Source: Macrostomum lignano
Taxonomy: Eukaryota
Direction of reading: 5' to 3'
NCBI GenBank assembly: GCA_002269645.1
Contig: NIVC01000625.1
Span: 248,001-312,000, forward strand
Length of the DNA stretch: 64,000 nucleotides
Of this stretch, positions 2,962 through 47,585 are shown piece after piece. How positions within the stretch are numbered: the first letter of the stretch is position 1; each line of letters begins with the position of its first letter. Below the pieces are notes generated by a model, which ran no database searches, was not told the origin of the DNA, and was given only the letters and a program-made list of their open reading frames with translations. The position numbers and the translations under genes were made by a program.

Positions 2962-2971
2962 CGGCGCTCAC

Positions 2972-16341: not shown

Positions 16342-16621
16342 GATAGAGTAGATTAGGAAATAATTTTAATTCAATGAATAGTTTTATTACTCGTAATACT
16401 ATTTTATTTATTACACTATATTATTCGCTTACGTTTCCGAACAGGTATTCATGTAGTTTCAAAAAAGCTATAGGAGGAATTTTTTTCCTGAAAATGAAAG
16501 CAAAGTTAATCAACAGCTAAGCAGAAAAGTCTGAACTTATTTTCTGAACGTCAGAAAATCCGGATTTTTGATTCGCTGGATCCCGCGCGATTACGAAAGC
16601 CCGGAAATTTGCAAGTCTTCA

Positions 16622-22796: not shown

Positions 22797-24359
22797 ATGT
22801 CGGAATCCGCCGTCCAGTTCCCGCTCCGCCGCGTCTTGCTGAGTGACGACGTCGACCCCCGCTGCGTGGCCATCCTGGCCGACGCCGGCATCGACGCCCA
22901 GCTCAAGGTCGGCCTGGCACCCGACGCCCTGATCGCCGAGCTGACCTCCGGTGGCTACGAAGGCCTGGTGGTCCGGTCGGCAACCAAAGTCACCCGCCAG
23001 GTGCTCGAGGCCGCCACGGCTCTGCGCGTCGTCGGCCGCGCCGGCACTGGCGTCGACAACATCGACTTGAACGCGGCCAGCGAGCGCGGCGTCCTCGTGC
23101 TGAACGCGCCGGGAGGCAACACGGTCTCGGCTGCTGAGCACGCCTGCACCCTGCTGCTCGGCCTCACGCGCCGCGTCCACCTCGCCGACGCCTCGATGCG
23201 CGCCGGCCGCTGGGACCGGAAGAAATTCCTCGGCACGGAGCTGCACGGCAAGACGCTGGCGGTGGTCGGACTCGGTCGCATCGGCCGCGAGGTCGCCAAC
23301 CGGATGCGCGCCTTCGGCATGCGAACCATCGGCTACGACCCCATGGTGACGCCCGAGCAGGCCAAGGAGTTCGGCGTCGAGTGGATGGAGCTCGACAAGC
23401 TGTGGCCGGAGGCGGACGCCGTCACGCTGCACGTCCCGCTGCTGCCGCACACGGAGAATCTCGTCAACGCCCGCGTGTTGGCCAGCTGCCGACGCGGCGT
23501 CTTCATCATCAACGCTGCCCGCGGCGGCCTGGTGCAGGAGGGCGACCTGCTGGCCGCTCTCGAGTCCGGCCAGTGCGGCGGCGCCGGTCTCGATGTGTTC
23601 GCCGTGGAGCCGCCGCAGGACGCCCGGCTACTGCAGCACGAGCGCGTGCTGACCACCCCGCACCTGGGCGCCTCCACCATCGAGGCGCAGAGCCGCGTCG
23701 CCGTGGAGATCGCCGAGCAGTTCGTCCGCCTGGCCCGCGGCGAGGGCGTCCACGGCGCCGTCAACGGCGAGGGCCTCGCCGCCAATCCGGAGACCGCGGC
23801 CTGGCAACTGCTGGCGCGTCGACTGGCGCAGCTGGCAGCAGCCGGAGTCGCCGCCGGCCTCGCAGGACCGAACGGCGACCGCCTGCGCCTGCGGCTCCGC
23901 GCCCCGGCCGCCCTGGCCCGCCTGGCCCGCCCGCTGCAAGCGGCGGCGGCGGCTGGCGCGCTGGCCACTCGCGGTGAATCGCGCGGCCTCGTCGGCGCCG
24001 TGGCGGCGGCCAACAAGCAGGGCATCGACGTCGACTTCGAGGTGGCCGAGGCCGAGGTCGTCAAGAAGGGGGCAGCCGCGCCGACGACCCTGGAGATCGA
24101 CTGCCCGGACAGGCGGCCCGGCTGGTCGGTGGGAGGCGTCGGCTCCGGGCCCGCGCTGACCCGCTGCTGCGGCCGCGAGCTGTCCCAGCCGCTGGTGCTG
24201 GACGGCACCGTGGCGCTGCTGCAGGCTGGCGCCGCGCAGCTGCCCCCCGTCCAGCGCCTGCTGGCCGCCGCGCGCTCAGCCGATGGCAGCTGCGTCGTCT
24301 GCCGCCTGGACGGACCGGCGGCTGTCGAGGGCAGCCAGCTGTGCGTGACCTTCAGCTGA
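22797..24359 (+). CDS. PHGDH: D-3-phosphoglycerate dehydrogenase, single exon, 520 aa
   Basis: MSESAVQFPLRRVLLSD..LVVRSATKVT..VGRAGTGVDNID..NAPGGNTVSAAEH; NAD-binding VVGLGRIG; INAARGGLV; TPHLGAST. Confidence 0.95.
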   Translation: MSESAVQFPLRRVLLSDDVDPRCVAILADAGIDAQLKVGLAPDALIAELTSGGYEGLVVRSATKVTRQVLEAATALRVVGRAGTGVDNIDLNAASERGVLVLNAPGGNTVSAAEHACTLLLGLTRRVHLADASMRAGRWDRKKFLGTELHGKTLAVVGLGRIGREVANRMRAFGMRTIGYDPMVTPEQAKEFGVEWMELDKLWPEADAVTLHVPLLPHTENLVNARVLASCRRGVFIINAARGGLVQEGDLLAALESGQCGGAGLDVFAVEPPQDARLLQHERVLTTPHLGASTIEAQSRVAVEIAEQFVRLARGEGVHGAVNGEGLAANPETAAWQLLARRLAQLAAAGVAAGLAGPNGDRLRLRLRAPAALARLARPLQAAAAAGALATRGESRGLVGAVAAANKQGIDVDFEVAEAEVVKKGAAAPTTLEIDCPDRRPGWSVGGVGSGPALTRCCGRELSQPLVLDGTVALLQAGAAQLPPVQRLLAAARSADGSCVVCRLDGPAAVEGSQLCVTFS

Positions 24360-26416: not shown

Positions 26417-26417
<1 letters not shown>

Positions 26418-26451
<34 letters not shown>

Positions 26452-26452
26452 G

Positions 26453-26487
<35 letters not shown>

Positions 26488-26488
26488 G

Positions 26489-26549
<61 letters not shown>
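26418..26549. repeat. (CTA)n microsatellite
   Basis: About 43 trinucleotide units. Confidence 0.97.
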
Positions 26550-26560
<11 letters not shown>

Positions 26561-27406
26561 ACTGCTACTACTACCGGTACTACTACTACATTCTCGAATG
26601 TATATTAAAATATTTATTTTGATTATCGTTTACTAATTTGAATCTTTATGCTACGAAATATATTTCCAATTATAATTTTGGAAGATTATATTTTTAACAA
26701 AAAGCTTGAAAGAAAACTTAGTAGTTCTGATTTGAAAACGAAAATATACACAACTGGAGAATTAAAAAAGTTGAAACTTTTCAAACTAGCTCTGTTACGA
26801 AATTAATAAACTACTACAAAAACCTTCTTTCGTTCACTCTCGTTTTATTTATTACTTGAAAAAGCTTCTCAAAAGTAAATTCATTAGACGCGATTAAAAA
26901 TGCAGCCGCGATAAAGAGAAGTGCATGCGCTCAATACTACTAATAAGCATATTTATTTGCATGAATGCCAGCTGCTAGACAGGAGTTGGACTAACTGTAA
27001 AAGAGTTAAAATAAAGTTGAGAATTTGTGTCCTGCAGCAATGAGGTCACTAAATATTCCTACATGAAGTTGATGCAGAGAGGGATACCCAACAGGTAGCT
27101 GTTGGTGGGTACCAACAGGTACCCAACTACATGCATGTTTACAACGAACTGTGCGGGATAATTTAGTCCTAGCAATTGCACCACTGAAAATGTACTTACA
27201 ACTGCCGAAAGTTTTAGTTGTCATGGCAACTAGGACAAGATATCTAGAGAATACATGCACACCCTATAGGATGTAAATTATTAACTAGTTAGACAGTTGT
27301 CATGACAACCATAAAGACAGAGCTAAGCTAATTAGAAAGAGACTATAAATCAGAGATTTGCTATGGCAACCACAGGGACTCAGTTGCTACCGTTAAGGAC
27401 TAAAAA

Positions 27407-30400
27407 TTAGGCAGTTGCCATGGCAACGCGGGCCGCGCCCCGGCCGCCGCTGTTGTTGCCAGTCCTGACAGTCCGGCTGCCGCCGGCCCCCAAGGCGACT
27501 GTCGTCCCGGCGCTTTCGCTGACGATGTCTTCGTCGTCGACGATCTCCTCCTCGTCCAGCGGACCGCGCCGCCAGATGGCGATGGCGAGGTCGGGCGCGA
27601 GCGCCAGCAGGGGCACCGTGGCCAGCATCAGCCAGGCCGCGGGCTGCCGGTGCAGCTCGAAGAACAGCCAGTAGAACGAGTGGTTCTCGTCGAAGATGTT
27701 CGTGTACATCGAGTTGTAGAAAGCGGCCTGCGGAGCGCAGATATGGGGAGAAATCATCGAAGTCAGTCGGAAATCATCAACTCAGCCAGTCAGAAATCAT
27801 CAACTCAGTCAGTCGGAAATCATCAACTCAGTCAGTCGGAAATCATCAACTCAGCCAGTCGGAAATCATCAACTCAGCCAGTCGGAAATCATCGACTCAG
27901 CCAGTCGGAAATCATCAACTCAGCCAGTGGGAAATCATCAACTCAGCCAGTGGGAAATCATCAACTCAGCCAGTCGGAAATCATCAACTCAGCCAGTCGG
28001 AAATCATCGACTCAGCCAGTCGGAAATCATCAACTCAGCCAGTGGGAAATCATCAACTCAGCCAGTGGGAAATCATCAACTCAGCCAGTCGGAAATCATC
28101 AACTCAGCCAGTGGGAAGTCACCCGGACGCACCAGCAGCGGGTAGCAGAGCACGGACAGCAGGAAGCTGAACACAACGATGGTGTGGAAGAACCGGGAGC
28201 ACATGATCAGCTTGGTGTGGACGACAATGAGGAGACACTCGACCACCAGGGTGCCCAGCGCGCTCAGGCCGAAGCCGGAGATGCCCGGCCTGCCGATGTC
28301 GTCGTTGAGCCAGAAGACGGCCGCGTTGCCGTAGAAGCAGACGCCGCTGTGCCAGAAGGCGGCGAGCATCCAGGCGAAGAAGCGGCGCCAGGACAGCGGC
28401 TCCACAGCCTTGCCGACCGCGTACAGGCGGGGCTCGCGGTACAGGCGGGAGCGGGGCAGGTGCTGCTCGAACACGCCGTACACCAGGATGGGCATGGCCG
28501 TCAGGAAGGCGTTGTACGCGGCCAGAAAGAAAGAGTCGTACAGACTGATGAGGTTGAAGCCGTTGTGCAGGGCGTAGAAAAACTGCGGCAGGGTGAAGGC
28601 CACATTCTTGTAGAAGAAGTACTGCACCAGCATGCTGAGCCTGTAGTAGAACAAGTGGCCGTGGAACAGCAGCAGCTTGCGGAGGTAGCGGAACCTGCGG
28701 GTGATTCACAGCTTCCGGTTGGAGTGGCTGCTGCAGTGATACCGGAAGTTACAGAAGGGAAGCTACAGGCCGAAAGCTATCGGAAGAAAGACCGGAAACT
28801 ATCTACTGGAAGCTACAGACTGGAAGCTACAGAACGGAAGCTACAGACCAGAAACTACATACTGGAAGCTACAGGCTGAAAGATACAGACCGGAAGCTAC
28901 AGACTGGAAACTACTGACCAGAGGCTACAGACCAGAGGCTACAGACCGGAAGCTATAGACCGGAAGCTACAGACCGGAAGCTACAGACCAGAGGCTACAG
29001 ACCGGAAGCTACAGACCAGAGGCTACAGACCAGAGGCTACAGACCAGAGGCTACAGACCAGAGGCTACAGACCGGAAGCTACAGACAGGAAATGAAACGA
29101 GAAGCGAAAACGTTATAAATAACAACCAACTAAAAACTGCCATCAGAAACTACAAAATAAAACGACGAATCTGAACCTGTAAAACCGGAAACTACCAACC
29201 GGAAAAAACAAAACGAACTGAAGCTCCAATCTCACCTCCCCATGCAGTAGTCCGAATTAAGCGCGGCCGCTCGGCCCTCCTTGCCGTAGAGCCCGACACC
29301 CACGTGAGCCTCCTTGATCATGCTGACGTCGTTGGCGCCATCGCCGATGGCGCAGGTGATCAGCGGCCACCTGCCGGAGTCATCGGCGGCGAGTTTGACG
29401 GCGGCCACGGTGCGCGACTTCTGGAGCGGCGTGCAGCGGCAGCAGAGAACGGCCGGGCTCTCGTCAGCCAGCCGCAGGAAGCGCCTACAGAGGTCACGGT
29501 CGTTGTCCCAGTCCGTCAGCATCTGCAGCGAGTCGCCCTCGACCACAATGCAGTAGTCGGCAACGCCGGGCCCGGAGCTCGCGGCGGCCGCCTCGGCGAT
29601 GGTCAAGGCGGAGTCCACCGCCTCCCGGGTGCGGCAGCCGACAATGCGAAGGCGGCGCATTCCGAGAGTCACGTGACCGGCAGCCAGGCTGATGTTCTCG
29701 GCAGTTTCCACCTGTGAAATAGGTTGGAGTGCGGCTTCTGGCTGGCAGCCAATCAGAATTCGAGTTCAGTAGCGGAGTGAGGTGGATGAAGTCAGCTGGC
29801 AGCCAATCAGAATTCGAGGTCAGTAGCGGAGTGAGGTGGATGAAGTTAGCTGGCAGCCAATCAGCAATCGAGGTCAGTAGCGGAGTGAGGTGGATGAAGT
29901 TAGCTGGCAAGCCAATTAGCAATCGAGGTCAGTAATGGAGTGAGGTGGGTAAAGTTAGCTGGCAGCCAATCAGCAATCGAGGTCAGTAATGGAGTGAGGT
30001 GGGTGAAGTTAGGTGACAGGCAATCAGATATTTAAGGCAACAGCTAGGGGGCAGGGGTCGCACCTTGTCACCCGTGAGGATCCAGACCCGGATGCCGGCC
30101 CGCCGGAGGTCGCTGATGCACTCCGGCACGCCGGCCTGCAGTTGGTCCTCCACAGCCGTGCAGCCCAGCAGCTGCAGGTCTTTCTCGACCGAGTCCGCGG
30201 CCTTCGTCAGCTTGGCCTCCCGATCGGCGAGGCTGGCCGAGGCCGCCTGCAGTTGCGCAGCGATTTGGTTGGCGTCCACCTGCGTCAGCCTCTTCCTGCC
30301 CACGACCAGCACGCGGAGGCCCTCCGCGCAGAAGTCGGCGACGTGCTTGACGGTGACTTCCGTGCTGCCGCTGATGCATCGGGGCAGCATGGCGGTGTCG

Positions 30401-33400
30401 GCGCCCTTAGTGATGAGCCAGAGGACGCCCATGGGGTCGGAGACCACAACCGACATCCGCCTGCGGTCTGAGTCGAACTCGAGCACGTGCAGCAGCTGAG
30501 GTGGGCGGGGATTAAAATTTCAGAGGTTACTACTAAGGGATTCCGAATGGCTTGATTTTGGAGGTGGGGTGGGTGTCAACCCTCCTCGCCTCTCATTGGC
30601 TGGCGCCCCGATCACTAGGTGATCGATACCCGTATCGATATCGGCGCTCGGCGCGCGCGCGCCGCAGGCGCGTGGCGCCAAGCGCCGCAGGCGCACCCTC
30701 CCGATATTAGATCCCAATAAATCAATCAGATCCCAAATCAATCAGATCCCAAATCAATCAGATCCCAAGCGCACCCTCCCGAGCCGCAGGCGTCCATGCA
30801 GCAGGCGCCCCTCCCCGCCGCACGCGCCCTCCCCCGACATGTATGCCGCAGGCGCCCTCCCGTCTCAGGCGCCCCTCCCGATATGTATGCGCACTCTCCC
30901 TATATGTACACCGATATGTATGCAGCAGGCGCCCCGAGTGTACACTCCCCCGATATGTGTGTACACCGATATGTAGTCATCGATACGGGCCTCTTCCCCT
31001 CTCTCACCTACATCTCAACTAGCGAAATCGAACCCAGGTCGCGCCCATACTAGGACACTACACGGTTGTGGGGTATAGGGAGCGAGAAGTTTCAACCCTA
31101 ACGCTGACGCAGCCCTGTACAGTGAGAGTGTACGGGCAGAGAGGGGTGGCGCGGACAGAGAACCAGCCACTAGGTTGTTATACTGTTGAAGCATAGGGAG
31201 CGAGAAGTTTTAACCCCGATGCTGACGCAGCCCTGTACACTGAGCGTGTACGGGCAGAGGGTGGGTGGAAAGAGATGTGAATAACACAGCCTGCTGCAGG
31301 AGCCGGATAGAGAGGCGCATGCTAGGACAGAGAGGTAGTGTGAGTCACACACACCCCACAGAGAAAGCCATACAGAGGATAGAGAGCTCCCTCCCCAGTT
31401 GCAGGGGACAGAGAGGCAGGCAGGGTATGCAGGGGCATGCGAACCGTCAAGGGGCCACGCGAGGATAGAGTGGAGGAGCAGAGATGTGTTTGGACAGAGA
31501 GCCAGCCACGTGTGCGTAGTGTGAGGGAACAGAAACATATGGAGCAGGAGGGAGATAGGAAGCAAACGCGCAGGGTAAGGGAGCCACACAGGGCGGTACA
31601 GTGAGACACGGGCAGGGGTGGAGCCGTGCGTGGACAGAGCTGAACGGCACGGTCAGCTGCAGGAATAGGATGATAGAGAGGCGCGGAGGGGGACAGAGAG
31701 CAGTGTGCAGGGGTAGGCAGCCACGCAGGCTGGGGAACAGAGAGGCGCGTGTCAGCCAGTTGCAGCCCGGGACAGAGAAGTATGAAGGGGGGCCTGGGAC
31801 AGAGTTCCGAGCAAGGCACAGAGGTAGGGTCCTGTAGCTATGTATAGGCAGGGAGCCACGCGAGGGCAGGACAGGGGAGCAGACATGCAAGTTGCATGCA
31901 AGGCCAGAGAGGTGTGCGCGGAGGGAGACAGAGAGCAGTGTGTAGGGGTAGGTAACAGCAAACTTTAGTAGCGGCGCGTGCGGGGACGGAGAAACCAGTC
32001 AGAGCATACAGAGACGTTACAGAGAGGTACACAAGCAGAGACCAAAGCGAGCAGAGCACATGTGTAGGGACAGAGACGTGAGGGAGAATCGACCAAAACA
32101 CGCTATGTATTTTCAAAAGTTGGTTTTAGTGCAACATGTTTAATAGTGGGTAGTATAATAGTATGTACATAGTAGGTATAATAGTAGTAATAATAGTAAG
32201 CATATTAGCCCAAAAGGTAGACTAAAACAGGCTAAACTGTGTGTACGCATCCTCATCACCCCACAAGCCCCCTCTCCCGCCAGACTCACTCTACCAAACC
32301 TGTATTGCTGCATGAAGGAAAATATAGTGTAAAAATACAGATCTTAACCGTCAGACCGCTGAAATCAGGGCACACTAGAGGGGGTTTCGGGGTCTGCATG
32401 CTCTATGTAAGCTGCTTGAGGAGGTTCCAAGGGCGTTGTGAGGGTTTCAATTATGTTTTGAAAAAACTAGAGGCTTAAATACAACGTTTTATTCAAAAGT
32501 AGGTTATTTTAATGAAATAGCTGACACAATCATTGTCGAGAGTAGAAATTTTTATAAGAAACCAGGCATTTTAGCAAAAATAAACCTTCAAACCACATAA
32601 AATTGAATAAAAAGCAGACATTTTCAATTATAAACCGCAAGTATTTTAATAGAAAAGTAAGCAAACAAGGCACAAAACCAGCAAATTTTACCTTTTTATT
32701 TTAATGTTACTGATAAGGTAGAGAGTAGAAACTTGTGAGCTGTACGGAGTTAGAAAGTATTAACCATTATGTATCGTATGAATTATTAGTTCAGTACCAG
32801 CCATTGGTCAAGCGAGCATTTATGAAGTTATTACGAGTGATGAAGGGATAGAGAGCTATATACAGGAAGACAGTATCCTTCTAAACCACCACGAACAGAT
32901 TGCTAATAGAGATAAGCTTTGTCTGTGTGCAGTATGAGTAAGCGAAGGCGGGGCAAATACTTTTCCACATGCCGGACAGAACAGTATTGTGCTAGGATTT
33001 CTCTCGAAATCGCGGTACGTTACTAGTTTTTATCACACCATCCAGATGCGTCAACTAGTCAGCAGTAGTCATTTATATGTTATTAGAACTTACAAACCCA
33101 GGTCAAGTAAATATTACAAAGAGTATATTACGTACACACACCAACTACGAATACCAAGCCATACTAGTCTACTTGCAGTGCTCCTGGAGGGAAGGGACGG
33201 CGGGGTGTACATCCGGCAGGGTGGGCGTCCAGCGAGTGTACATCTGACAGGATGGGTGTTCAGCAAGTGTACATCTGACAGGGTGGGCGTTCAGCAAGTG
33301 TACCTTCAGCGTCGAGTAGGTGTACACCCGTCAGTGGGAACTCAGCCCCTCCCACCAATGTCGTGTGCATGCGGTTAGTCAGTATAGTGGTGGGGTAGAC

Positions 33401-35175
33401 GGTGCAGGAAGGAAACCCAGATGCTGACGCTGCCCTGTACAGCGAGCAACCAGCCCTCCTGTAGCAGGAGGGGGACAGAGAGTGCGTGGAGGCAGTAGGA
33501 GATAGAGGACGCTACCCGGCATGTCGCAGCACGCGGCGCGGGACAGAGAGGCAGTGTGTAAGTCACCCCCACAGGGAGAGCTGCCCTGGCAGGAGGCGCG
33601 GGACAGAGAGGCGGTGAATCACACCCCACGGAGAGAGCCGTACAGCGAGCTTCCCCACCCGAGTCCGGTAAATATTACAGAGTATTACGTGCACACGCCA
33701 GCCCTGAATACCAAGCCATACTAGTCTACCTGCAGTGCTCCCAGAGGGAAGGGATGGTCAGGAGTTACACACCAAGAATGCATTCATACAAAGAGTACAC
33801 AACTCGAGCCCAGACACCAAGTCACAGTCTACTTACAGTAGAGATGGTAGATTAATAGCAAGATTATATTACAATTAGACCTCCCTAGCACATGAGGAGT
33901 GAAATTCAATAATAATTGAATTCAATAATAATACAACATTTAGACGTAGTAATTTAATTACAAAATACCACTAACACTGAGCCAACGAATTGTAGGTTAC
34001 AAAGGAGTTGCCACTCATATGGAAAGCCAGTATAATGCAGGTGTATATTATTAAAACATAGACAAAAACGATGCAGACGTATATACACACTATTGATTTT
34101 GTACATGTACATTTCGGCATATTACCACACATCGCAGGCACATATTATATATCGGGGGATAGGTTAAAATACACACATCGTAGATGTAGAAGCAGACACA
34201 ATGCAGGAAAATTATGATACGAGTGTACATATTAGTGCGTAAAAGTATCATATTATGACACCCTGTAGCACATATTGACATAATGCAGGGGAAAATATTG
34301 ACAGAAATAGTACACAATTGTAGAGGTAACAACCCGCCAACTAGTAAGGACATCCAGCACTTGTTCAGGTTTTTATTATTTCGAGACGAGTGTCATGCCC
34401 CGCAAGAGATCTTATCAGAAATTTGTTGAACTCCACTGCAACTCTCCCCAGAGCCTCCAAATGTGAGTTTTTAACCCAGGGTCGAGTACAAAGGACCCGC
34501 CCACTCTTAACCCCAAGGGGTGATCGTAGCGGAGACCAAGTACAGTGCGGACGGAGAGGGGTAACAGAAAGCGCTGCATCAGACCGCAGGGCTGCATTCC
34601 TCCCCGAGGTAGGCGCGTCAGCTCCCACTCCTCATTTAACCATCAAGTAAACTAAAGAAGTCAAGCAGAAAGCCTTACAATCACCCGCAACCAGCACAAG
34701 TAAGAGTACTTTCCACTAGAGAGCCATAGTGCAAGATTCGCGAGCCAAGTTGAAGAAGCACACCAAATTACACTAAAGACATATGTATTAAAAAGCATAC
34801 CGGCACCTCTACAAAAACACAGTATGTACCGATTAAAGTTGCTTTTGGTGCAGTGTATTTAATAAAAAGCAGGTACCTAACACAAAAGTAGGCATCAATG
34901 CAGTGCACGGACTAAACTGTATTTACAAACGCAGGGCAACGAACTACACACAATGTAGCGCATAGACATAATTGTACGCATAAATGTACGCAATTTCCGG
35001 TATATAGGACCACATGTTCGCAAATGTACACAATGTACACAAACAAACACACACACACACAAACACAAACACAAACACACACACACTCAGGCGTATCCTG
35101 CAGAGCGCATCCTGCAGCGCCGATCGCCGCAGGCGATGGCGCCATCGGCAGGAAGCTCTTGCTGTGAATACGCCT

Positions 35176-35256
<81 letters not shown>

Positions 35257-38200
35257 TTTGTGTACATTGTGTACATTTGCGAACATGTGGTCCTATATAC
35301 CGGAAATTGCGTACATTTATGCGTACAATTATGTCTATGCGCTACATTGTGTGTAGTTCGTTGCCCTGCGTTTGTAAATACAGTTTAGTCCGTGCACTGC
35401 ATTGATGCCTACTTTTGTGTTAGGTACCTGCTTTTTATTAAATACACTGCACCAAAAGCAACTTTAATCGGTACATACTGTGTTTTTGTAGAGGTGCCGG
35501 TATGCTTTTTAATACATATGTCTTTAGTGTAATTTGGTGTGCTTCTTCAACTTGGCTCGCGAATCTTGCACTATGGCTCTCTAGTGGAAAGTACTCTTAC
35601 TTGTGCTGGTTGCGGGTGATTGTAAGGCTTTCTGCTTGACTTCTTTAGTTTACTTGATGGTTAAATGAGGAGTGGGAGCTGACGCGCCTACCTCGGGGAG
35701 GAATGCAGCCCTGCGGTCTGATGCAGCGCTTTCTGTTACCCCTCTCCGTCCGCACTGTACTTGGTCTCCGCTACGATCACCCCTTGGGGTTAAGAGTGGG
35801 CGGGTCCTTTGTACTCGACCCTGGGTTAAAAACTCACATTTGGAGGCTCTGGGGAGAGTTGCAGTGGAGTTCAACAAATTTCTGATAAGATCTCTTGCGG
35901 GGGCATGACACTCGTCTCGAAATAATAAAAACCTGAACAAGTGCTGGATGTCCTTACTAGTTGGCGGGTTGTTACCTCTACAATTGTGTACTATTTCTGT
36001 CAATATTTTCCCCTGCATTATGTCAATATGTGCTACAGGGTGTCATAATATGATACTTTTACGCACTAATATGTACACTCGTATCATAATTTTCCTGCAT
36101 TGTGTCTGCTTCTACATCTACGATGTGTGTATTTTAACCTATCCCCCGATATATAATATGTGCCTGCGATGTGTGGTAATATGCCGAAATGTACATGTAC
36201 AAAATCAATAGTGTGTATATACGTCTGCATCGTTTTTGTCTATGTTTTAATAATATACACCTGCATTATACTGGCTTTCCATATGAGTGGCAACTCCTTT
36301 GTAACCTACAATTCGTTGGCTCAGTGTTAGTGGTATTTTGTAATTAAATTACTACGTCTAAATGTTGTATTATTATTGAATTCAATTATTATTGAATTTC
36401 ACTCCTCATGTGCTAGGGAGGTCTAATTGTAATATAATCTTGCTATTAATCTACCATCTCTACTGTAAGTAGACTGTGACTTGGTGTCTGGGCTCGAGTT
36501 GTGTACTCTTTGTATGAATGCATTCTTGGTGTGTAACTCCTGACCATCCCTTCCCTCTGGGAGCACTGCAGGTAGACTAGTATGGCTTGGTATTCAGGGC
36601 TGGCGTGTGCACGTAATACTCTGTAATATTTACCGGACTCGGGTGGGGAAGCTCGCTGTACGGCTCTCTCCGTGGGGTGTGATTCACCGCCTCTCTGTCC
36701 CGCGCCTCCTGCCAGGGCAGCTCTCCCTGTGGGGGTGACTTACACACTGCCTCTCTGTCCCGCGCCGCGTGCTGCGACATGCCGGGTAGCGTCCTCTATC
36801 TCCTACTGCCTCCACGCACTCTCTGTCCCCCTCCTGCTACAGGAGGGCTGGTTGCTCGCTGTACAGGGCAGCGTCAGCATCTGGGTTTCCTTCCTGCACC
36901 GTCTACCCCACCACTATACTGACTAACCGCATGCACACGACATTGGTGGGAGGGGCTGAGTTCCCACTGACGGGTGTACACCTACTCGACGCTGAAGGTA
37001 CACTTGCTGAACGCCCACCCTGTCAGATGTACACTTGCTGAACACCCATCCTGTCAGATGTACACTCGCTGGACGCCCACCCTGCCGGATGTACACCCCG
37101 CCGTCCCTTCCCTCCAGGAGCACTGCAAGTAGACTAGTATGGCTTGGTATTCGTAGTTGGTGTGTGTACGTAATATACTCTTTGTAATATTTACTTGACC
37201 TGGGTTTGTAAGTTCTAATAACATATAAATGACTACTGCTGACTAGTTGACGCATCTGGATGGTGTGATAAAAACTAGTAACGTACCGCGATTTCGAGAG
37301 AAATCCTAGCACAATACTGTTCTGTCCGGCATGTGGAAAAGTATTTGCCCCGCCTTCGCTTACTCATACTGCACACAGACAAAGCTTATCTCTATTAGCA
37401 ATCTGTTCGTGGTGGTTTAGAAGGATACTGTCTTCCTGTATATAGCTCTCTATCCCTTCATCACTCGTAATAACTTCATAAATGCTCGCTTGACCAATGG
37501 CTGGTACTGAACTAATAATTCATACGATACATAATGGTTAATACTTTCTAACTCCGTACAGCTCACAAGTTTCTACTCTCTACCTTATCAGTAACATTAA
37601 AATAAAAAGGTAAAATTTGCTGGTTTTGTGCCTTGTTTGCTTACTTTTCTATTAAAATACTTGCGGTTTATAATTGAAAATGTCTGCTTTTTATTCAATT
37701 TTATGTGGTTTGAAGGTTTATTTTTGCTAAAATGCCTGGTTTCTTATAAAAATTTCTACTCTCGACAATGATTGTGTCAGCTATTTCATTAAAATAACCT
37801 ACTTTTGAATAAAACGTTGTATTTAAGCCTCTAGTTTTTTCAAAACATAATTGAAACCCTCACAACGCCCTTGGAACCTCCTCAAGCAGCTTACATAGAG
37901 CATGCAGACCCCGAAACCCCCTCTAGTGTGCCCTGATTTCAGCGGTCTGACGGTTAAGATCTGTATTTTTACACTATATTTTCCTTCATGCAGCAATACA
38001 GGTTTGGTAGAGTGAGTCTGGCGGGAGAGGGGGCTTGTGGGGTGATGAGGATGCGTACACACAGTTTAGCCTGTTTTAGTCTACCTTTTGGGCTAATATG
38101 CTTACTATTATTACTACTATTATACCTACTATGTACATACTATTATACTACCCACTATTAAACATGTTGCACTAAAACCAACTTTTGAAAATACATAGCG

Positions 38201-41200
38201 TGTTTTGGTCGATTCTCCCTCACGTCTCTGTCCCTACACATGTGCTCTGCTCGCTTTGGTCTCTGCTTGTGTACCTCTCTGTAACGTCTCTGTATGCTCT
38301 GACTGGTTTCTCCGTCCCCGCACGCGCCGCTACTAAAGTTTGCTGTTACCTACCCCTACACACTGCTCTCTGTCTCCCTCCGCGCACACCTCTCTGGCCT
38401 TGCATGCAACTTGCATGTCTGCTCCCCTGTCCTGCCCTCGCGTGGCTCCCTGCCTATACATAGCTACAGGACCCTACCTCTGTGCCTTGCTCGGAACTCT
38501 GTCCCAGGCCCCCCTTCATACTTCTCTGTCCCGGGCTGCAACTGGCTGACACGCGCCTCTCTGTTCCCCAGCCTGCGTGGCTGCCTACCCCTGCACACTG
38601 CTCTCTGTCCCCCTCCGCGCCTCTCTATCATCCTATTCCTGCAGCTGACCGTGCCGTTCAGCTCTGTCCACGCACGGCTCCACCCCTGCCCGTGTCTCAC
38701 TGTACCGCCCTGTGTGGCTCCCTTACCCTGCGCGTTTGCTTCCTATCTCCCTCCTGCTCCATATGTTTCTGTTCCCTCACACTACGCACACGTGGCTGGC
38801 TCTCTGTCCAAACACATCTCTGCTCCTCCACTCTATCCTCGCGTGGCCCCTTGACGGTTCGCATGCCCCTGCATACCCTGCCTGCCTCTCTGTCCCCTGC
38901 AACTGGGGAGGGAGCTCTCTATCCTCTGTATGGCTTTCTCTGTGGGGTGTGTGTGACTCACACTACCTCTCTGTCCTAGCATGCGCCTCTCTATCCGGCT
39001 CCTGCAGCAGGCTGTGTTATTCACATCTCTTTCCACCCACCCTCTGCCCGTACACGCTCAGTGTACAGGGCTGCGTCAGCATCGGGGTTAAAACTTCTCG
39101 CTCCCTATGCTTCAACAGTATAACAACCTAGTGGCTGGTTCTCTGTCCGCGCCACCCCTCTCTGCCCGTACACTCTCACTGTACAGGGCTGCGTCAGCGT
39201 TAGGGTTGAAACTTCTCGCTCCCTATACCCCACAACCGTGTAGTGTCCTAGTATGGGCGCGACCTGGGTTCGATTTCGCTAGTTGAGATGTAGGTGAGAG
39301 AGGGGAAGAGGCCCGTATCGATGACTACATATCGGTGTACACACATATCGGGGGAGTGTACACTCGGGGCGCCTGCTGCATACATATCGGTGTACATATA
39401 GGGAGAGTGCGCATACATATCGGGAGGGGCGCCTGAGACGGGGAGGGCGCCTGCGGCATACATGTCGGGGAGGGCGCGTGCGGCGGGGAGGGGCGCCTGC
39501 TGCATGGACGCCTGCGGCTCGGGAGGGTGCGCTTGGGATCTGATTGATTTGGGATCTGATTGATTTGGGATCTGATTGATTTGGGATCTGATTGATTTAT
39601 TGGGATCTAATATCGGGAGGGTGCGCCTGCGGCGCTTGGCGCCACGCGCCTGCGGCGCGCGCGCGCCGAGCGCCGATATCGATACGGGTATCGATCACCT
39701 AGTGATCGGGGCGCCAGCCAATGAGAGGCGAGGAGGGTTGACACCCACCCCACCTCCAAAATCAAGCCATTCGGAATCCCTTAGTAGTGAGGTTCCCAGA
39801 AATTCTTTGCCCCTCCTAGCAACTAGCAACCAATGTCTTTACCAGAGCAACTATACTATCCCAGCAGCCAATGCATTCTAGCTAGCAACAAATCTTTAAT
39901 CGCCTAGCAACCAATTTGCTCATCTAGCAACTAGACATTATGCCTTTGCCTAGGAACCAAATCCTTTCGTCTAGCACCCAAATCCTTTCGCCTAGTAACC
40001 AAATCATTTTGTCTAACAATCAAATTCTTTTCTTAATAACAACCATAAACTTCGACTAGCAACCAGATCTTTTTTGCCTAGCAACCAAATCCTTTTGCCT
40101 AGCAACCAAACCGTTTCACCTAACAACTAAATAATTCTGCATAGCAACTAAACCCTTTAATCTAGCAACCAAATCCTTTCGCCTAGCAACCAAATCATTT
40201 CGCCTAGCAACCAAATCATTTCGCCTAGCAACAAAATTCTGATCACCTGGTAGTCCAGGCTGCGACCTCCGACCCCAACCGTCAGCTGGTTGCCCGTCCT
40301 GCCGCGGAAGGTGACGCCCAGCTTCCGGCAGCCGTCCAGCAGCGCCTTCTCGTCCGGTGAGCTGGCGTGGTAAACCAGGCGGCCGCTGTTGCCCGACCGC
40401 TCGGCCCGGGCCGTGTGGCAGAGGGCCAGGTGGGTGAGGAACTCCTGCTGCGCCGGCCCCAGCTGCTGCTTGCTGTTGTGGCTGGCCAGCAGGGAGCTGC
40501 CCTTCAGCGAGTACTTCACGCCGTTGATGGAGCAGCCGCGGAAGGTCATGATGTTCTCCGTGAGGGTGCCGGTCTTGTCGCAGAACAGGTGGTCGACGAC
40601 GCCGAGCTCCTCAATGATTTCGGACGTGTTGGCCTTCGCCCAGTTGCTCGGGTCGTCGTCCGACATCCGGTGGAACATCTCGAGGTCGTGATCGATGAAC
40701 ATGGAGCAGAAGAACTTCTGCACCTCGATGGTGACCAGCATGGAGATGGGGATGATGTAGTGCATGATAATGAGCGCGTTCAGCGTCTCCTGGAAGTTCG
40801 GGCGCTTGAGCTGCTCGCCGGGCAGGAACCAGGCCTTGCTGATGGCGTCGGAGCGGGCAATGAGCAGGTTGCCCGCCACCAGCACGCAGGTGAGCAGCAG
40901 CAGCAGGCCGATCAGCACCAGCATGAAGCTGTTGAGTCTGGTGTCCACCACCGATCGCTTGGCCCGCGACCCCCTGGAGTTGAGGCCAACCTTCGTCTCC
41001 GAGCCGGTGTACAGCGCCAGGCCGTAGGCGAAGTTGGTGTTGCGGAGCACCGCGCCGCGCAGCAGGACATTGCTGGCGTTCAGCGGGATGGAGGAGTGCG
41101 CCTGCGGCTTCACCAGCTGCAGCACGCCAGCGAAGCTGTAGAGGTCGGGCTTGGGCTGCTCGCAGACCACCTTGCCCAGCAGTTCGGAGCATAGCAGCCC

Positions 41201-41833
41201 CGCGTTCCGCAGCGACTTGGTGGCCTCGACGGCCCAGAAGGTCTTCAAGTTGGTCTCGCCGTCCAGATTGGCGGTGGTGACGAGGCACTCGCCGGAGTGC
41301 TGCGAGCTAGACAGCAGCAGCAGGTCGCACGGGAAGCACTCGTTGCGGAACACCTTCACCAGGTCGCCCACGCGCAGCTGCTCGGAGCTGACCAGCTGGC
41401 TCTCGCCGTCCCGCACCACCCAAACGAGGGTCTTGTTGACTTTCCTGTCCTCCAGGTGGCGCAGCAGGTCCTCGTAGCCCTGCTTCACCATGGTGACCAG
41501 GATGACGAAGGCCAGGGGCAGGATGGAGGCCATCTCGCTGACGGGCGTGTCAGTGGACAGCTGGATGATGCAGGCCACCAGGAAATAAAGGTTGGGCAGC
41601 CGGCTGATCTGCTCCAGCAGGTTCAGCGGCAGGAAAGTGATGATGTTGTAGCGCGCGGTGGACACGGAGTTGTTGGGGTACTTCTCCGACTGGCCGATGC
41701 TCGGCTTGCCGTCCGGACCGGGCAGCTCGAAGTTGAGGTGGTTGATGTACACCGTGCGGAGCTCCGGGCGCGGCGACTCGCACAGCAGCTTTGGCTTAAC
41801 CAGCTGCCACAGAGTCTCCAGGGGGCTCGCCAT
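27407..41833 (-). CDS. ATP11: P4-type ATPase phospholipid flippase, ATP11-like, 5 exons, ~1125 aa
   Basis: Phase-compatible exons 41833-40247, 30495-30064, 29711-29236, 28694-28133 and 27727-27407. Motifs KQGYEDLLRH, TANLDGETNLK, CDKTGTLTEN, SSPDEKAL, LEFDSDRRRMSV, WILTGDK|VETA, AIGDGANDVSMI, QYFFYKNV. Confidence 0.94.
27748..28116. repeat. 23-bp minisatellite (GAAATCATCAACTCAGCCAGTCG)
   Basis: Fills ATP11 intron 4. Confidence 0.93.
28740..29088. repeat. 14-bp minisatellite (ACCGGAAGCTACAG / ACCAGAGGCTACAG)
   Basis: In ATP11 intron 3. Confidence 0.9.
29735..30012. repeat. ~54-bp tandem repeat x ~5
   Basis: GCTGGCAGCCAATCAGCAATCGAGGTCAGTAGCGGAGTGAGGTGGATGAAGTTA units in ATP11 intron 2. Confidence 0.88.
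30529..39788. mobile_element. 9,260-bp palindromic (fold-back) insertion with 6-bp TSD GAGGTT, non-coding
   Basis: Left arm 30529-35096 is the reverse complement of right arm 35168-39788; spacer 35097-35167. GAGGTT at 30523-30528 and 39789-39794. Every ORF-track entry in one arm has a mirror ORF in the other. Confidence 0.93.
39890..40232. repeat. Degenerate ~21-bp repeat (TCGCCTAGCAACCAAATCATT-like)
   Basis: CTAGCAAC core repeated next to the ATP11 exon 1 donor. Confidence 0.8.
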
Positions 41834-42312
41834 CGACAGTGACTACGGTATGCGCTACAATGGTAGTCCTTGGCCGATTGGCTGCTAAGAATATGGATAA
41901 ATGCTCAAATCAGTTGCTGCCACCTAGCTAGCTCTCAGCGGCGAAGGCAGCGACTGAACTAAGACACTTTTAGCCATAGACATGCCGAAGCATGGCAAGC
42001 AAGTCGAAAAAACTTCACTTGGGAATGCGTATGCTCAAGGGGAGATAAGAGTAATTTATATAGCCAGCTTTACTGCATCACGTGGATCATTCAGCCACGC
42101 GACAGGTGCACTCTGTAGGCAGTGCCGACCCCGAGCATACACACACACAGTGTACAGCGGCCCGGACTTCCTCATATCCTCGTTACATGTACATACCCTG
42201 TGCCAGGTTCAAATCAGTTCGAAATACTGCTTAGAGGAATTCACAGTCCGTGCGATCCAAGTAATTAAATTCCTGTTTGTCGTGACTCCCACGTTTGTCC
42301 TTTTTGTCGCTC

Positions 42313-43031
42313 CAGTCAGTTCCGCTCAGCATCATATTGGCCCATCAGTTCCGCTCAGCATCATATTGGCCCATCAGTTCCGCTCAGCATCATATTGGCC
42401 CATCAGTTCCGCTCAGCATCATATTGGCCCATCAGTTCCGCTCAGCATCATATTGGCCCATCAGTTCCGCTCAGCATCATATTGCTCCATCAGTTCCGCT
42501 CAGCATCATATCGCTCCATCAGTTCCGCTCAGCATCAAATTGCCGCATCAGTTCCGCTCAGCATCAAATTGCCGCATCAGTTCCGCTCAGCATCAAATTG
42601 CCGCATCAGTTCCGCTCAGCATCATATTGGCCCATCAGTTCCGCTCAGAATCATATTGGCCCATCAGTTCCGCTCAGAATCATATTGGCCCATCAGTTCC
42701 GCTCAGCATCATATTGGCCCATCAGTTCCGCTCAGCATCATATTGGCCCATCAGTTCCACTCAGCATCATATTGCTCCATCAGTTCCGCTCAGCATCATA
42801 TCGCTCCATCAGTTCCGCTCAGCATCAAATTGCCGCATCAGTTCCGCTCAGCATCAAATTGCCGCATCAGTTCCGCTCAGCATCATAATTGCCCACCAGT
42901 TCCGCTCAACATCATAATTGCCCATCAGTTCCGCTCAGCATCATAATTGCCCACCAGTTCCGCTCAGCATCATAATTGCCCACCAGTTCCGCTCAGCATC
43001 ATTTTGCCCCACCAGTTCCGCTCAGCATCAC
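42313..43031. repeat. 29-bp minisatellite (CATCAGTTCCGCTCAGCATCATATTGGCC)
   Basis: Tandem array. Confidence 0.96.
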
Positions 43032-43521
43032 ACTGAAGCAAGAGAACCAGAGGCAATCTTTCTGTAAAAGCAACCAAAAATCCAAAGATGTAAACATGAA
43101 ATTTTCATAGTGAATTGCAAAAAAGCAGTTCGCGCGTGAAAAAAGTAGGCATCAATTTTATTTAGTGAAGCTGTTCAGGTAAAGCCAGTGCAGGAGCCTC
43201 TCGGCCCGGTAAAAAAGGTATTTAGAAAAGGCAACCCAGTTGAGCAATTAAGGCGTGAATTCAGTTTTGACAACAGAAAAAATAGAAACATCCGCAGACT
43301 TCATCAGCAAAAGAGATAGAAAAAGTAAGGCAGTAAAGCGGAGATACTTGGTCGGGACAGGCGGAAGATTAAATTTTTCTGTGAAATCTGTGAAAGCGCA
43401 GTTCTTTTAGAAGCAGAGCAGAAAATGAGAATTTAAATTTATCAAGCAGAATCTGAAGAAGTCGCAAAGCCACAGCAATCAGGTCTCAGCAGAGAAAACA
43501 AATAAAAAACCCAGTTCGCAC

Positions 43522-45908: not shown

Positions 45909-46599
45909 AAATTGATCTAGGCTATATGGCCGGGCTGCGGGGCTGTAGACACTGCGAGGCTGAAGGTTTAAAGTCGAAAAGACGCACTCAAGAGCAAAGC
46001 AGGTGAGAAACAGAATAAAGTGTTTAATTTTTGCTGACAGCAGGGCGCCAATAAACTGCAGAAAAGTGACAGAGATGGCCGAAGCCAGGCTTCCGCTGGA
46101 GAAAACTGAGGCGGGATAGGCAGTTTTTGTTTTCAATTTCACATAATAAAAAATGGGGAAAAATTGGGGGCAGAAAAACTGTGCAAATGCAACGAGATGT
46201 AGAAAAAATGTGCCATAAACTTGTAGGCCGCTAGGAGTGCCCGCCTGAGGCAAAATATAAACTATAGATATTAATACTAGGCAAAGCTGATAGAAAAAGG
46301 CTAACGTATGAAAAAACAAGCATAGAATATAAACAGAGCCTTAAAAAACTTGGCAAAAACATGGCGAACTGAAGTAAACTTGAATAAATAAATAAATAAA
46401 TAAATAGGAAAAAAGCAGCACTTGCTCTCGGCCCTCTTAACAGCTTTAATTTGAAGCAGCCATCACCGCCCAGGCAGCGAGAAAAACTACAGAAACAAAC
46501 GGGACAGTAAAATTGAAGAAGCGGCTGCAGATGGGACTCCCTGTGTCTGCTGAGCCTCTGGACTGCTGCACAGCTACAGCTAAGCTTTCAGGGGCAGGG

Positions 46600-47585
46600 G
46601 TGACAGGCGGGAGTGAGAGCCGGAGTGACAGGCGGGAGTGAGGCCGGAGTGACAGGCGGGAGTGAGAGGCGGGAGTGAGGCCGGAGTGACAGGCGGGAGT
46701 GAGAGGCGGGAGTGACAGGCGGGAGTGAGAGGCGGGAGTGACAGGCGGGAGTGAGAGGCGGGAGTGAGAGGCCGGAGTGACAGGCGGGAGTGAGAGGCCG
46801 GAGTGACAGGCGGGAGTGAGAGGCGGGAGTGAGAGGCGGGAGTGAGGCGTGAGTGAGAGGCGGGAGTGAGGCGGGAGTGAGAGGCGTGAGTGAGAGGCGG
46901 GAGTGAGAGGCGGGAGTGAGGCGTGAGTGAGAGGCGGGAGTGAGAGGCGGGAGTGAGAGGCGGGAGTGAGAGGCCGGAGTGACAGGCGGGAGTGAGAGGC
47001 CGGAGTGACAGGCGGGAGTGAGAGGCGGGAGTGAGAGGCGGGAGTGAGAGGCGGGAGCGAGGCGGGAGTGAGAGGCGGGAGTGAGAGGCGGGAGTGAGAG
47101 GCGGGATTGAGAGGCGGGAGTGAGGCGGGAGTGAGAGGCGGGAGTGAGAGGCGGGATTGAGAGGCGGGATTGAGAGGCGGGAGTGAGAGGCGGGAGTGAG
47201 GCGGGAGTGAGAGGCGGGAGTGAGAGGCGGGAGTGAGAGGCGGGAGTGAGGCGTGAGTGAGAGGCGGGAGTGAGGCCGGAGTGACAGGCGGGAGTGAGAG
47301 GCGGGAGTGAGGCCGGAGTGACAGGCGGGAGTGAGAGGCGGGAGTGACAGGCGGGAGTGAGAGGCGGGAGTGACAGGCGGGAGTGAGAGGCGGGAGTGAG
47401 AGGCCGGAGTGACAGGCGGGAGTGAGAGGCCGGAGTGACAGGCGGGAGTGAGAGGCGGGAGTGAGAGGCGGGAGTGAGAGGCGGGAGTGAGAGGCGGGAG
47501 TGAGGCGGGAGTGAGAGGCGGGAGTGAGAGGCGGGAGTGAGGCGGGAGTGAGAGGCGGGAGTGAGAGGCGGGAGTGAGAGGCGGG
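46600..47585. repeat. GA-rich 11-13-bp minisatellite (GCGGGAGTGAGAG and variants)
   Basis: Tandem array. Confidence 0.95.

What the first reader, a model, noticed from the sequence alone, without database searches (positions are those of the whole stretch)
30529..39788. Giant 9.26-kb near-perfect palindromic insertion element in ATP11 intron 1
Seen: arms of 4,568 and 4,621 bp are reverse complements separated by only 71 bp, and the unit is flanked by a 6-bp direct repeat (GAGGTT). Removing it restores AAAATTTCA-GAGGTT-CCCAGAAA, and the ATP11 exons on either side splice in phase. No transposase, integrase, polymerase or capsid ORF is recognisable (longest ORF 165 aa). The whole element is effectively its own TIR, an order of magnitude larger than typical MITEs. 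Inference: a non-autonomous fold-back or snap-back element mobilised in trans. If the intron is transcribed through, the pre-mRNA could form a ~4.5-kb dsRNA stem (siRNA source or ADAR substrate), and the DNA could extrude a cruciform.
Basis: partly seen in the sequence, partly recalled or inferred. Interest (0 to 1): 0.9.

Follow-up and report, generated by a model that had tools for sequence, protein, structure and literature searches.

The report
Palindromic transposon insertion in flatworm gene
A 9.26-kb stretch of non-coding DNA that is almost a perfect mirror image of itself has recently inserted into the first intron of one of three duplicated copies of a lipid-flippase gene in the flatworm Macrostomum lignano. 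It looks like an unusually large member of the known "fold-back" class of gene-less transposons, not a new kind of element.

Summary
Window 30529-39788 is a 9,260-bp palindrome with arms of 4,568 and 4,621 bp and a 71-bp spacer, flanked by a direct GAGGTT repeat. It lies in CDS intron 1 of an ATP11-like P4-ATPase gene on the minus strand.

The window is Macrostomum lignano assembly Mlig_3_7, contig NIVC01000625.1:248001-312000. The same assembly holds two other homeologous copies of the locus. Both are precise empty sites with one copy of the 6-mer, so this is a real, derived insertion with a target-site duplication.

The arms show no substitutions outside the central microsatellite, against 1-2.6% divergence between the homeologous flanks, so the palindrome is very young or homogenised. 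No protein domain, RNA family or known protein matches either arm.

Best reading (about 0.6): a non-autonomous fold-back-type DNA transposon, inserted through a 6-bp staggered cut. Its palindromic body probably arose by snap-back copying of a half-element at a short inverted repeat.

Not testable here:
- copy number in the genome
- transposon superfamily
- transcription, dsRNA or small RNAs
- support from single long reads

It is a new member of a known kind.

The parts
30523..30528 (.). Left copy of the target-site duplication, GAGGTT
   Evidence: The empty homeologs have a single copy of this 6-mer.
30529..35096 (.). Left arm of the palindrome (4,568 bp). Unique, non-coding sequence in a GC mosaic of 29-65%.
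   Evidence: No Pfam hit in six frames. No Rfam hit apart from the microsatellite hairpin.
30529..30990 (.). Terminal and subterminal region. The terminus is ACTACTAAGGGATTCCGAATGG. Clustered short motifs follow: CCGCAGGCG x4, CCCTCCCGA x3, CGATATGTA x3, a 16-bp unit x3 and several short palindromes. These are candidate transposase-binding sites (inferred).
35037..35086 (.). Interrupted (CA)n microsatellite at the inner end of the left arm
35097..35167 (.). 71-bp central spacer. It is not identical to its own reverse complement but is an imperfect palindrome, bounded by the 14-nt inverted repeat ACACTCAGGCGTAT / ATACGCCTGAGTGT. It contains no sequencing adapter.
   Evidence: (I13).
35168..39788 (.). 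Right arm of the palindrome (4,621 bp). It includes (GT)43 at 35178-35263 and 4 copies of the 16-bp unit at 39533-39598.
39789..39794 (.). Right copy of the target-site duplication, GAGGTT
30496..40246 (-). Host intron 1 of the CDS, GT..AG, 9,751 nt. It would be 485 nt without the element and one duplication copy. The element ends 33 nt upstream of the 3' splice site. The intron also holds a 21-bp minisatellite at 39943-40237.
   Evidence: The homeolog intron is about 500 bp.
40247..41833 (-). Exon 1 of the ATP11-like P4-ATPase (529 codons, ATG at 41833)
   Evidence: There are 12 differences from homeolog B, all synonymous.
30064..30495 (-). Exon 2 of the P4-ATPase (144 codons, phase 0)

Best explanation
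This is a recently inserted, non-autonomous fold-back-type class II (DNA) transposon of unassigned superfamily.

Shown:
- A 9,260-bp palindromic, gene-less DNA was inserted into intron 1 of one of three homeologous copies of a P4-ATPase gene in Macrostomum lignano.
- The insertion duplicated 6 bp of target.
- The other two copies keep the intact target.

Inferred:
- The insertion was made by a DDE-type transposase or integrase supplied in trans. It would recognise the identical ends (ACTACTAAGGG...) and the motif-rich subterminal 460 bp, and cut the target with a 6-bp stagger.
- The palindromic body arose when a broken or half-copied precursor folded back at the 14-nt inverted repeat next to a (CA)n tract and primed copying of itself. 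That would give two identical arms around a 71-bp asymmetric centre.
- In its present place it is a passenger. It is removed with the intron, where the two arms should pair and loop the insert out. The host coding sequence is intact.
For: Insertion and duplication:
- Homeolog B (NIVC01000108.1) aligns to window 26417-30528 and 39788-43030 with a 7-bp overlap, and reads TTTC-T-GAGGTT-CCCAG.
- Homeolog C (NIVC01002283.1) reads TTTT-T-CAGGGT-CCCAG in an intron of about 500 bp.
- Two independent footprint-free sites make insertion in copy A the derived state.
- The flanking repeat is direct, not an extension of the palindrome, which rules out an in-situ inverted duplication.

Transposon-like ends: identical termini that are unique in the window, and clustered subterminal motifs.

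No coding capacity and no RNA family match.

Youth: no substitutions over the 4,518 bp of each arm outside the microsatellite, against 1.0% and 2.6% divergence between the A and B flanks. Published subgenome divergence is 1.9-2.4% (PMC10733133).

Snap-back origin: the centre is a 14-nt inverted repeat around a 71-bp imperfectly palindromic spacer beside a microsatellite.

Host gene intact: all three gene models encode 1125 aa. Exon 1 differs between A and B at 12 positions, all synonymous.
Against: - No second copy of the element or of its termini was seen in the 64-kb window or in the two 21-kb homeologous loci. The genome could not be searched, so family membership is unproven.
- No superfamily can be assigned. 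A 6-bp duplication is not the hallmark of the fold-back elements best known from Drosophila, and the ends do not match any canonical terminus I can recall.
- No transposase is nearby.
- The base before the left GAGGTT (A) differs from both empty sites (T). The duplication could therefore be 7 bp with one mismatch, which would put the two ends out of register by one base.
Confidence: 0.6

Rival explanations
1. A one-off capture of a palindromic DNA fragment during repair of a staggered double-strand break, with no transposase and no family. The fragment could be an extrachromosomal or broken-chromatid fold-back product. The 6-bp duplication would come from fill-in of the overhangs.
For: Only one copy is visible. 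The element has no genes. The centre has the short-inverted-repeat architecture typical of break-induced palindromes.
Against: The ends are exactly symmetric to the base, and the junctions are clean with an exact 6-bp duplication and no filler or deletion. That is what transposase or integrase chemistry gives and is unusual for end-joining capture. The subterminal motif clusters look like binding sites.
Confidence: 0.15
2. A defective, gene-less derivative of a Polinton/Maverick-like self-synthesising element. It would be a 'one-end dimer' made by strand fold-back during protein-primed replication, as in palindromic defective adenovirus genomes, and integrated by a retroviral-type integrase.
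For: - The duplication is 6 bp and the inverted repeats are very long. Polintons have 5-8-bp duplications and 100-1,500-bp terminal inverted repeats (PMC10748475).
- The terminus begins with a reiterated trinucleotide, ACTACT. Protein-primed 'jumping-back' initiation needs such a repeat (my own recollection; a lead, not a test).
- The arms are identical.
Against: - No polymerase, integrase, capsid, protease or ATPase remnant in any frame of 4.6 kb.
- At 9.3 kb it is below the usual 13-25 kb.
- The termini are AC...GT, not the AG...CT I recall for Polintons.
- No Polinton gene is in the window.
Confidence: 0.1
3. An assembly artefact: a fold-back (missed-adapter) PacBio read or a Canu mis-join created the palindrome.
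For: - The assembly is PacBio RS data assembled with Canu 1.4 and polished with Pilon (PMC5730564).
- The only arm differences outside the microsatellite are homopolymer and tandem-unit indels, typical of consensus error.
- The two other copies of the locus lack the element.
- Read evidence could not be inspected.
Against: - A fold-back read gives A-X-X'-A', with inverted flanks. Here the right flank is the correct continuation of the gene, and the junctions carry a direct 6-bp duplication of the sequence found once in the empty sites.
- No SMRTbell, ONT or Nextera adapter is at the centre; the best local score is 7 of 45.
- The centre is asymmetric, with microsatellites of different length and composition.
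Confidence: 0.07
4. A co-opted hairpin-RNA locus. The intronic palindrome would be kept because its transcript is diced into small RNAs that silence related elements, like maize Mu killer or Drosophila hpRNA genes.
For: The structure alone. It is a 4.6-kb perfect inverted duplication inside a transcribed, conserved gene.
Against: It is present in only one of three homeologs and is extremely young, so there has been no time for selection. No target is known. There are no expression or small-RNA data.
Confidence: 0.05

Closest known systems
Foldback (FB) elements of Drosophila and FB-like or Mutator-related fold-back families (for example Tm1 of root-knot nematodes, PMC3169594)
   Same: Almost the whole element consists of two long inverted arms around a short centre. 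It has no coding capacity of its own, is flanked by a target-site duplication, and is presumed to be mobilised in trans.
   Different: - The arms here are unique sequence. Tandem arrays cover only about 8% of an arm, whereas classical FB arms are built of short tandem repeats.
- The duplication is 6 bp, not the 9 bp I recall for FB and Mutator-like elements.
- The arms of 4.6 kb are identical.
- No family has been shown.
Galileo, the long-TIR 'fold-back-like' member of the P superfamily in Drosophila (PMC4168063, PMC2775673)
   Same: Very long terminal inverted repeats, many gene-less copies, and a short target-site duplication. It is a source of structural instability.
   Different: - Galileo inverted repeats reach about 1.2 kb (my recollection) and flank a P-like transposase in complete copies.
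- Its duplication is 7 bp. Here it is 6 bp, or 7 bp only if one mismatch is allowed.
- No P-like sequence is present.
Polinton/Maverick elements
   Same: A duplication of about 6 bp, long terminal inverted repeats, and a reiterated terminal trinucleotide compatible with protein-primed initiation.
   Different: No genes at all, a smaller size, and different terminal dinucleotides.
Break-induced large palindromes seeded by short inverted repeats (Tetrahymena rDNA; yeast and mammalian gene-amplification palindromes). Cited from my own knowledge.
   Same: Two identical long arms around a short asymmetric spacer, bounded by a short inverted repeat.
   Different: Those form in place at chromosome breaks. 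This one sits as a discrete insertion with a target-site duplication in otherwise collinear DNA.
Mu killer (maize) and hpRNA loci: inverted duplications that produce silencing hairpin RNA. Cited from my own knowledge.
   Same: A long perfect inverted duplication lying in a transcribed region.
   Different: No evidence here of transcription, small RNAs or a target.

Membership tests
Non-autonomous TIR (class II) DNA transposon | Terminal inverted repeats at both ends | tested here: met
   The ends are identical to the base over 190 bp, and over the whole arm once low-complexity indels are allowed for.
Non-autonomous TIR (class II) DNA transposon | Target-site duplication of fixed length, with the empty site holding one copy | tested here: met
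   GAGGTT is on both sides. It occurs once in homeolog B, and as a diverged single CAGGGT in homeolog C.
Non-autonomous TIR (class II) DNA transposon | No transposase of its own | tested here: met
   Six-frame Pfam scan: no hit at E<=1. Concatenated open segments against 5.8 billion proteins: no hit.
Non-autonomous TIR (class II) DNA transposon | Several copies sharing the termini, and an autonomous partner | not testable with these tools
   No nucleotide search of the M. lignano genome is available. There is no copy in the window, L001, L002 outside this locus, or L003.
Drosophila-type Foldback (FB) elements | Arms made of tandem sub-repeats | tested here: not met
   Five short arrays total about 350 of 4,568 bp.
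Drosophila-type Foldback (FB) elements | 9-bp target-site duplication (my recollection) | tested here: not met
   6 bp.
Polinton/Maverick | 5-8-bp (typically 6-bp) duplication and long terminal inverted repeats (PMC10748475) | tested here: met
Polinton/Maverick | Protein-primed polymerase B, integrase and capsid genes; 13-25 kb | tested here: not met
   No domain in any frame. The element is 9.26 kb.
P superfamily (Galileo-like) | 7-8-bp duplication | tested here: inconclusive
   A 7-bp TGAGGTT is possible only with one mismatch in the left copy and ends offset by one base.
Missed-adapter or fold-back read artefact | Adapter sequence at the centre; flanks inverted relative to each other | tested here: not met
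   No adapter. The flanks are the two halves of one intron in the correct orientation.
Hairpin-RNA (hpRNA / Mu killer-type) locus | Transcribed inverted duplication yielding small RNAs against a homologous target | not testable with these tools
   Only the structure and its place in an intron are shown.

The most novel reading that the evidence does not exclude
The element belongs to an undescribed kind of mobile DNA that propagates through a hairpin (snap-back) intermediate. Only one arm plus the centre would be copied, and the second arm would be regenerated by self-primed synthesis at each round. Arms would therefore always be identical, whatever the age of the family. A variant of this reading is a palindromic defective derivative of a protein-primed Polinton-like replicon, as suggested by the ACTACT terminal reiteration and the 6-bp duplication.
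Probability: 0.07. Interest if true: 0.8.

Novelty: new member of a known kind. Interest (0 to 1): 0.35.

Why it matters
If the fold-back transposon reading holds, M. lignano has had a DNA transposon system active since its three subgenomes diverged. That is useful to know for a model flatworm in which transgenesis and genome stability are studied.

The locus is also a natural test case. It is a 4.6-kb perfect hairpin inside the intron of a conserved gene, with two unaffected homeologs in the same nucleus as internal controls. It could show how an animal tolerates a long palindrome at three levels:
- replication (stability of the DNA)
- splicing (is the gene copy still processed normally?)
- RNA silencing (is the hairpin diced into small RNAs?)

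It does not change any general view of transposons.

Tried and rejected
- **In-situ inverted duplication of intron sequence.** Rejected. The empty homeologs contain none of the arm sequence, and the flanking repeat is direct.
- **Head-to-head dimer of a complete 4.6-kb element.** Rejected. The inner ends do not resemble the outer termini; the best local score is 9.
- **Precise excision from homeologs B and C rather than insertion in A.** Rejected as unparsimonious. It needs two footprint-free sites, one of them with a diverged target.
- **RIP-like mutation of the AT-rich blocks.** Dinucleotide indices are not RIP-like.
- **CACTA or hAT assignment.** The first base and the 6-bp duplication do not fit. 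An 8-bp reading needs two mismatches and ends offset by two bases.
- **Searches that found nothing:**
  - terminal 22-mer in JGI metagenome contigs and IMG/VR
  - Pfam on six frames
  - Rfam at gathering threshold; at E<=1 the only hit is the microsatellite hairpin
  - protein database with concatenated ORFs
  - literature on Macrostomum palindromes or fold-back elements
- **Organism identification.** The first protein search, with the flippase exon, failed to identify the organism. The PHGDH neighbour did.
- **Polinton terminal repeats.** I could not retrieve the original Polinton paper to check my recollection about terminal repeats.
Full report
**1. The observation**

The inverted-repeat search on window 29500-40800 returns collinear arm pairs that tile 30529-39788. 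A BLAST of the element against the window aligns all 9,260 bp to its own reverse complement at 98.7%, and all the difference is gaps and microsatellite.

Reading the sequence and the repeat table (pair I13) fixes the boundaries:
- left arm 30529-35096 (4,568 bp)
- spacer 35097-35167 (71 bp)
- right arm 35168-39788 (4,621 bp)

A global alignment of the two arms gives 4,565 matched positions and not one substitution outside the central microsatellite. The differences are:
- one 16-bp tandem unit (3 versus 4 copies of AAATCAATCAGATCCC)
- three single-base differences in runs of C
- an interrupted (CA)n on the left against a pure (GT)43 on the right

The element is bounded by GAGGTT at 30523-30528 and 39789-39794. 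The repeat is direct. It cannot be extended by a base on either side, and it is not a continuation of the palindrome. The terminal 22-mer occurs only at the two ends.

**2. Where the window comes from**

The neighbouring gene at 22812-24356 encodes a D-3-phosphoglycerate dehydrogenase that is 100% identical to BOX15_Mlig017968g1 of the flatworm Macrostomum lignano. Looking up that protein and the two other members of its 90% cluster returned three contigs of one assembly, GCA_002269645.1 (Mlig_3_7).

Locus L002 (NIVC01000625.1:260536-282359) is 100% identical to window 12536-34359. The window is therefore NIVC01000625.1:248001-312000, and the element is at contig positions 278,529-287,788.

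Mlig_3_7 was built from PacBio reads with Canu 1.4 and polished with Pilon. It is known to be highly redundant (PMC5730564). The sequenced DV1 line carries three homeologous subgenomes that differ by about 1.9-2.4% in SNPs (PMC10733133). The three contigs are those three copies of this locus.

**3. The host gene**

The gene is a P4-ATPase lipid flippase on the minus strand (Pfam PhoLip_ATPase_N, E1-E2_ATPase, Cation_ATPase and Hydrolase). Its best-named relatives are ATP11-type 'IF' proteins. Aligning a homolog to the window and reading the junctions gives:
- exon 1: 41833-40247, ending ...TAC CAG|GTGATC
- exon 2: starting at 30495 after ...CCTCAG|
- both junctions in phase 0

The annotated 1125-aa CDS starts at the ATG at 41833, so this is the first intron of the CDS. 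The intron is 9,751 nt, and would be 485 nt without the element and one duplication copy. The element ends 33 nt upstream of the 3' splice site. Because of the duplication, the last 33 nt, where a branch point would lie, are unchanged.

**4. The decisive comparison**

Homeolog B (L001, NIVC01000108.1) is collinear with the window. It aligns to 26417-30528 at 98.98% and to 39788-43030 at 97.4%, and the two alignments overlap by 7 bp in L001. Its sequence at that point is ...AAAATTTC-T-GAGGTT-CCCAGAAA..., with one copy of the 6-mer and nothing else.

Homeolog C (L003, NIVC01002283.1) has an intron of about 500 bp that reads ...GAAATTTT-T-CAGGGT-CCCAGAAA.... Neither locus contains any sequence similar to the element.

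These two independent footprint-free sites have several consequences:
- The element is an insertion in copy A, made after the copies diverged.
- The palindrome did not form in place from intron sequence.
- It is very hard to explain as a fold-back read artefact. Such an artefact would give inverted flanks and no duplication.

The centre also carries no SMRTbell, ONT or Nextera adapter.

One detail stays open. The base before the left GAGGTT is A, while both empty sites and the right junction have T. Either copy A has a flanking substitution, or the duplication is 7 bp with one mismatch and the two ends are offset by one base.

**5. What the element contains**

I found nothing recognisable.
- ORFs are short (165 aa at most) and of low complexity.
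- All six reading frames of one arm, scanned against Pfam with stops masked, give no family even at E<=1.
- A 3,477-aa concatenate of every stop-free segment of 55 aa or more matches no protein at E<=1e-5 in the 5.8-billion-sequence collection, which does include M. lignano proteins.
- Rfam gives nothing at gathering thresholds. At E<=1 the only hit is a sub-threshold mir-3149 match, which is simply the (CA)n/(GT)n hairpin at the centre.
- Tandem arrays cover only about 8% of an arm, so the arms are essentially unique sequence.
- Composition alternates between blocks of 55-65% GC and 29-43% GC.

The first 460 bp are distinctive. After the terminus ACTACTAAGGGATTCCGAATGG come several short palindromes and clusters of CCGCAGGCG (four per end, plus one in the centre), CCCTCCCGA and CGATATGTA. 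That arrangement resembles the subterminal binding-site arrays of many DNA transposons. This is a resemblance, not a test.

**6. Age and origin of the palindrome**

There are no substitutions over the 4,518 bp of each arm outside the microsatellite. The flanks of A and B differ by 1.0-2.6%. Either the palindrome was formed very recently relative to the subgenome split, or the arms are kept identical by conversion. Pilon polishing with reads that map to both arms could also have erased rare differences.

The three C-run differences are of the kind left by PacBio consensus. The microsatellite difference (a 36-bp length change and three A/C changes) is larger and looks real.

The centre is informative. 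The arms end in the 14-nt inverted repeat ACACTCAGGCGTAT / ATACGCCTGAGTGT, next to the microsatellite. They enclose a 71-bp spacer that is itself an imperfect palindrome. This is the architecture left when a resected end folds back on a short inverted repeat and primes copying of its own strand. That route is known for large palindromes in ciliates, yeast and mammalian cells (my own knowledge).

I therefore infer that a half-element, or a copy interrupted during gap repair, regenerated a second, identical end in this way. That would have produced a derivative with two perfect ends that a transposase could move.

**7. Mechanism and rivals**

My best explanation (about 0.6) is a non-autonomous fold-back-type DNA transposon, inserted by an enzyme that makes 6-bp staggered cuts.

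What is shown:
- the insertion
- the duplication
- the symmetric ends
- the lack of genes
- the youth of the palindrome

What is inferred:
- mobilisation in trans
- the snap-back origin
- the existence of a family

The rivals are:
- A one-off capture of palindromic DNA at a staggered break (0.15). This is disfavoured by the exact, filler-free junctions.
- A gene-less derivative of a Polinton/Maverick-like replicon (0.1). The 6-bp duplication, the long inverted repeats (PMC10748475) and the ACTACT terminal reiteration fit. The total absence of Polinton genes and the size do not.
- An assembly artefact (0.07). Reads could not be inspected, but the geometry argues against it.
- A co-opted hairpin-RNA locus (0.05). 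Only the structure supports it.

**8. Consequences for the host**

All three homeologs are annotated with a 1125-aa product. Exon 1 of A and B differs at 12 of 1,587 positions, all synonymous, and exon 2 is identical. So there is no sign that the copy carrying the insert has decayed.

If the intron is transcribed, the two arms should pair and bring the splice sites back to about the distance they had before the insertion. The resulting 4.6-kb duplex would be a plausible Dicer substrate. None of this could be tested here.

At the DNA level, the 71-bp spacer should make cruciform extrusion unlikely. Hairpin formation on the lagging-strand template remains possible (my own knowledge).

**9. Comparison with known elements, and novelty**

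The closest known kinds are:
- fold-back elements: Drosophila FB, and Mutator-related fold-back families such as Tm1 (PMC3169594)
- the long-TIR P-superfamily element Galileo (PMC4168063)
- Polintons, for the duplication length
- short-inverted-repeat-seeded palindromes, for the way the body was probably made

It fails the defining features of classical FB (tandem-repeat arms, 9-bp duplication) and of autonomous Polintons (genes, size). It meets the generic features of a non-autonomous TIR transposon, except for the one that could not be tested, copy number.

I file it as a new member of a known kind. It is notable for the length and perfection of its unique-sequence arms, and for the built-in controls that the two empty homeologs provide. 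Interest is 0.35.

Noticed in passing
window 10124-14643: A fragment of a Ty3/gypsy-like LTR retrotransposon, with RVT_1, RT_RNaseH_2 and Integrase_H2C2 in consecutive ORFs. It is present in this homeolog, but homeolog B has an unrelated 1.5 kb at the same place. This is a second homeolog-specific insertion. A 178-nt, 98% inverted repeat (12894-13071 / 13333-13510) sits between the RNase H and integrase ORFs.
   Followed up: partly
window, throughout (for example 2524-3035, 4878-5731, 14700-16346, 19896-22167, 42200-43166, 46527-47200, 57650-58800): More than 20 minisatellite arrays with periods of 8-40 bp, many longer than 1 kb, fill introns and intergenic DNA. They create long spurious ORFs on both strands. 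Array lengths differ between homeologs.
   Followed up: partly
window 39943-40237 and 29741-30028: The introns on either side of exon 2 each carry a minisatellite built on a CCAAT-like core. One has a 21-bp unit, CCTTTCGCCTAGCAACCAAAT, x14. The other has a 54-bp unit containing GCCAATCAG, x5. The element's own terminal region also contains CTCATTGGCTGG, which is a CCAAT box on the other strand.
   Followed up: no
window 22512-24359; L001 10001-11563; L003 10001-11017: The phosphoglycerate dehydrogenase gene next to the flippase is annotated with products of different length in the three homeologs (607, 520 and 338 aa). Either the gene models are inconsistent, or real differences are arising between the copies.
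   Followed up: no
window 8001-10000 and 60001-64000: AT-rich intergenic blocks (31-36% GC) have CpG observed/expected of 0.2-0.3. Exons have 0.8-0.9 and the palindromic element has 0.72. The reason is not known.
   Followed up: no
window 30522 versus L001 17872 and L003 about 17557: The base immediately before the left target-site duplication is A in the copy with the insert and T in both empty copies. T is also the last base of the element. The duplication is therefore 6 bp, or 7 bp with one mismatch.
   Followed up: yes
window 35037-35263: A sub-threshold Rfam match to mir-3149 (53.7 bits against a gathering score of 100). It is caused by the (CA)n/(GT)n hairpin at the centre of the palindrome and is not a microRNA gene.
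   Followed up: yes
window 61311-61407: ARAGORN calls a 97-nt tRNA-Asn with the anticodon ATT in an AT-rich region. This is probably a false positive.
   Followed up: no
(tool behaviour): The protein search with flippase exon 1 did not return the gene's own annotated 1125-aa product from the same assembly. All listed hits were shorter than 1,000 aa. Absence from that search is therefore not evidence that a protein is absent from the collection.
   Followed up: no
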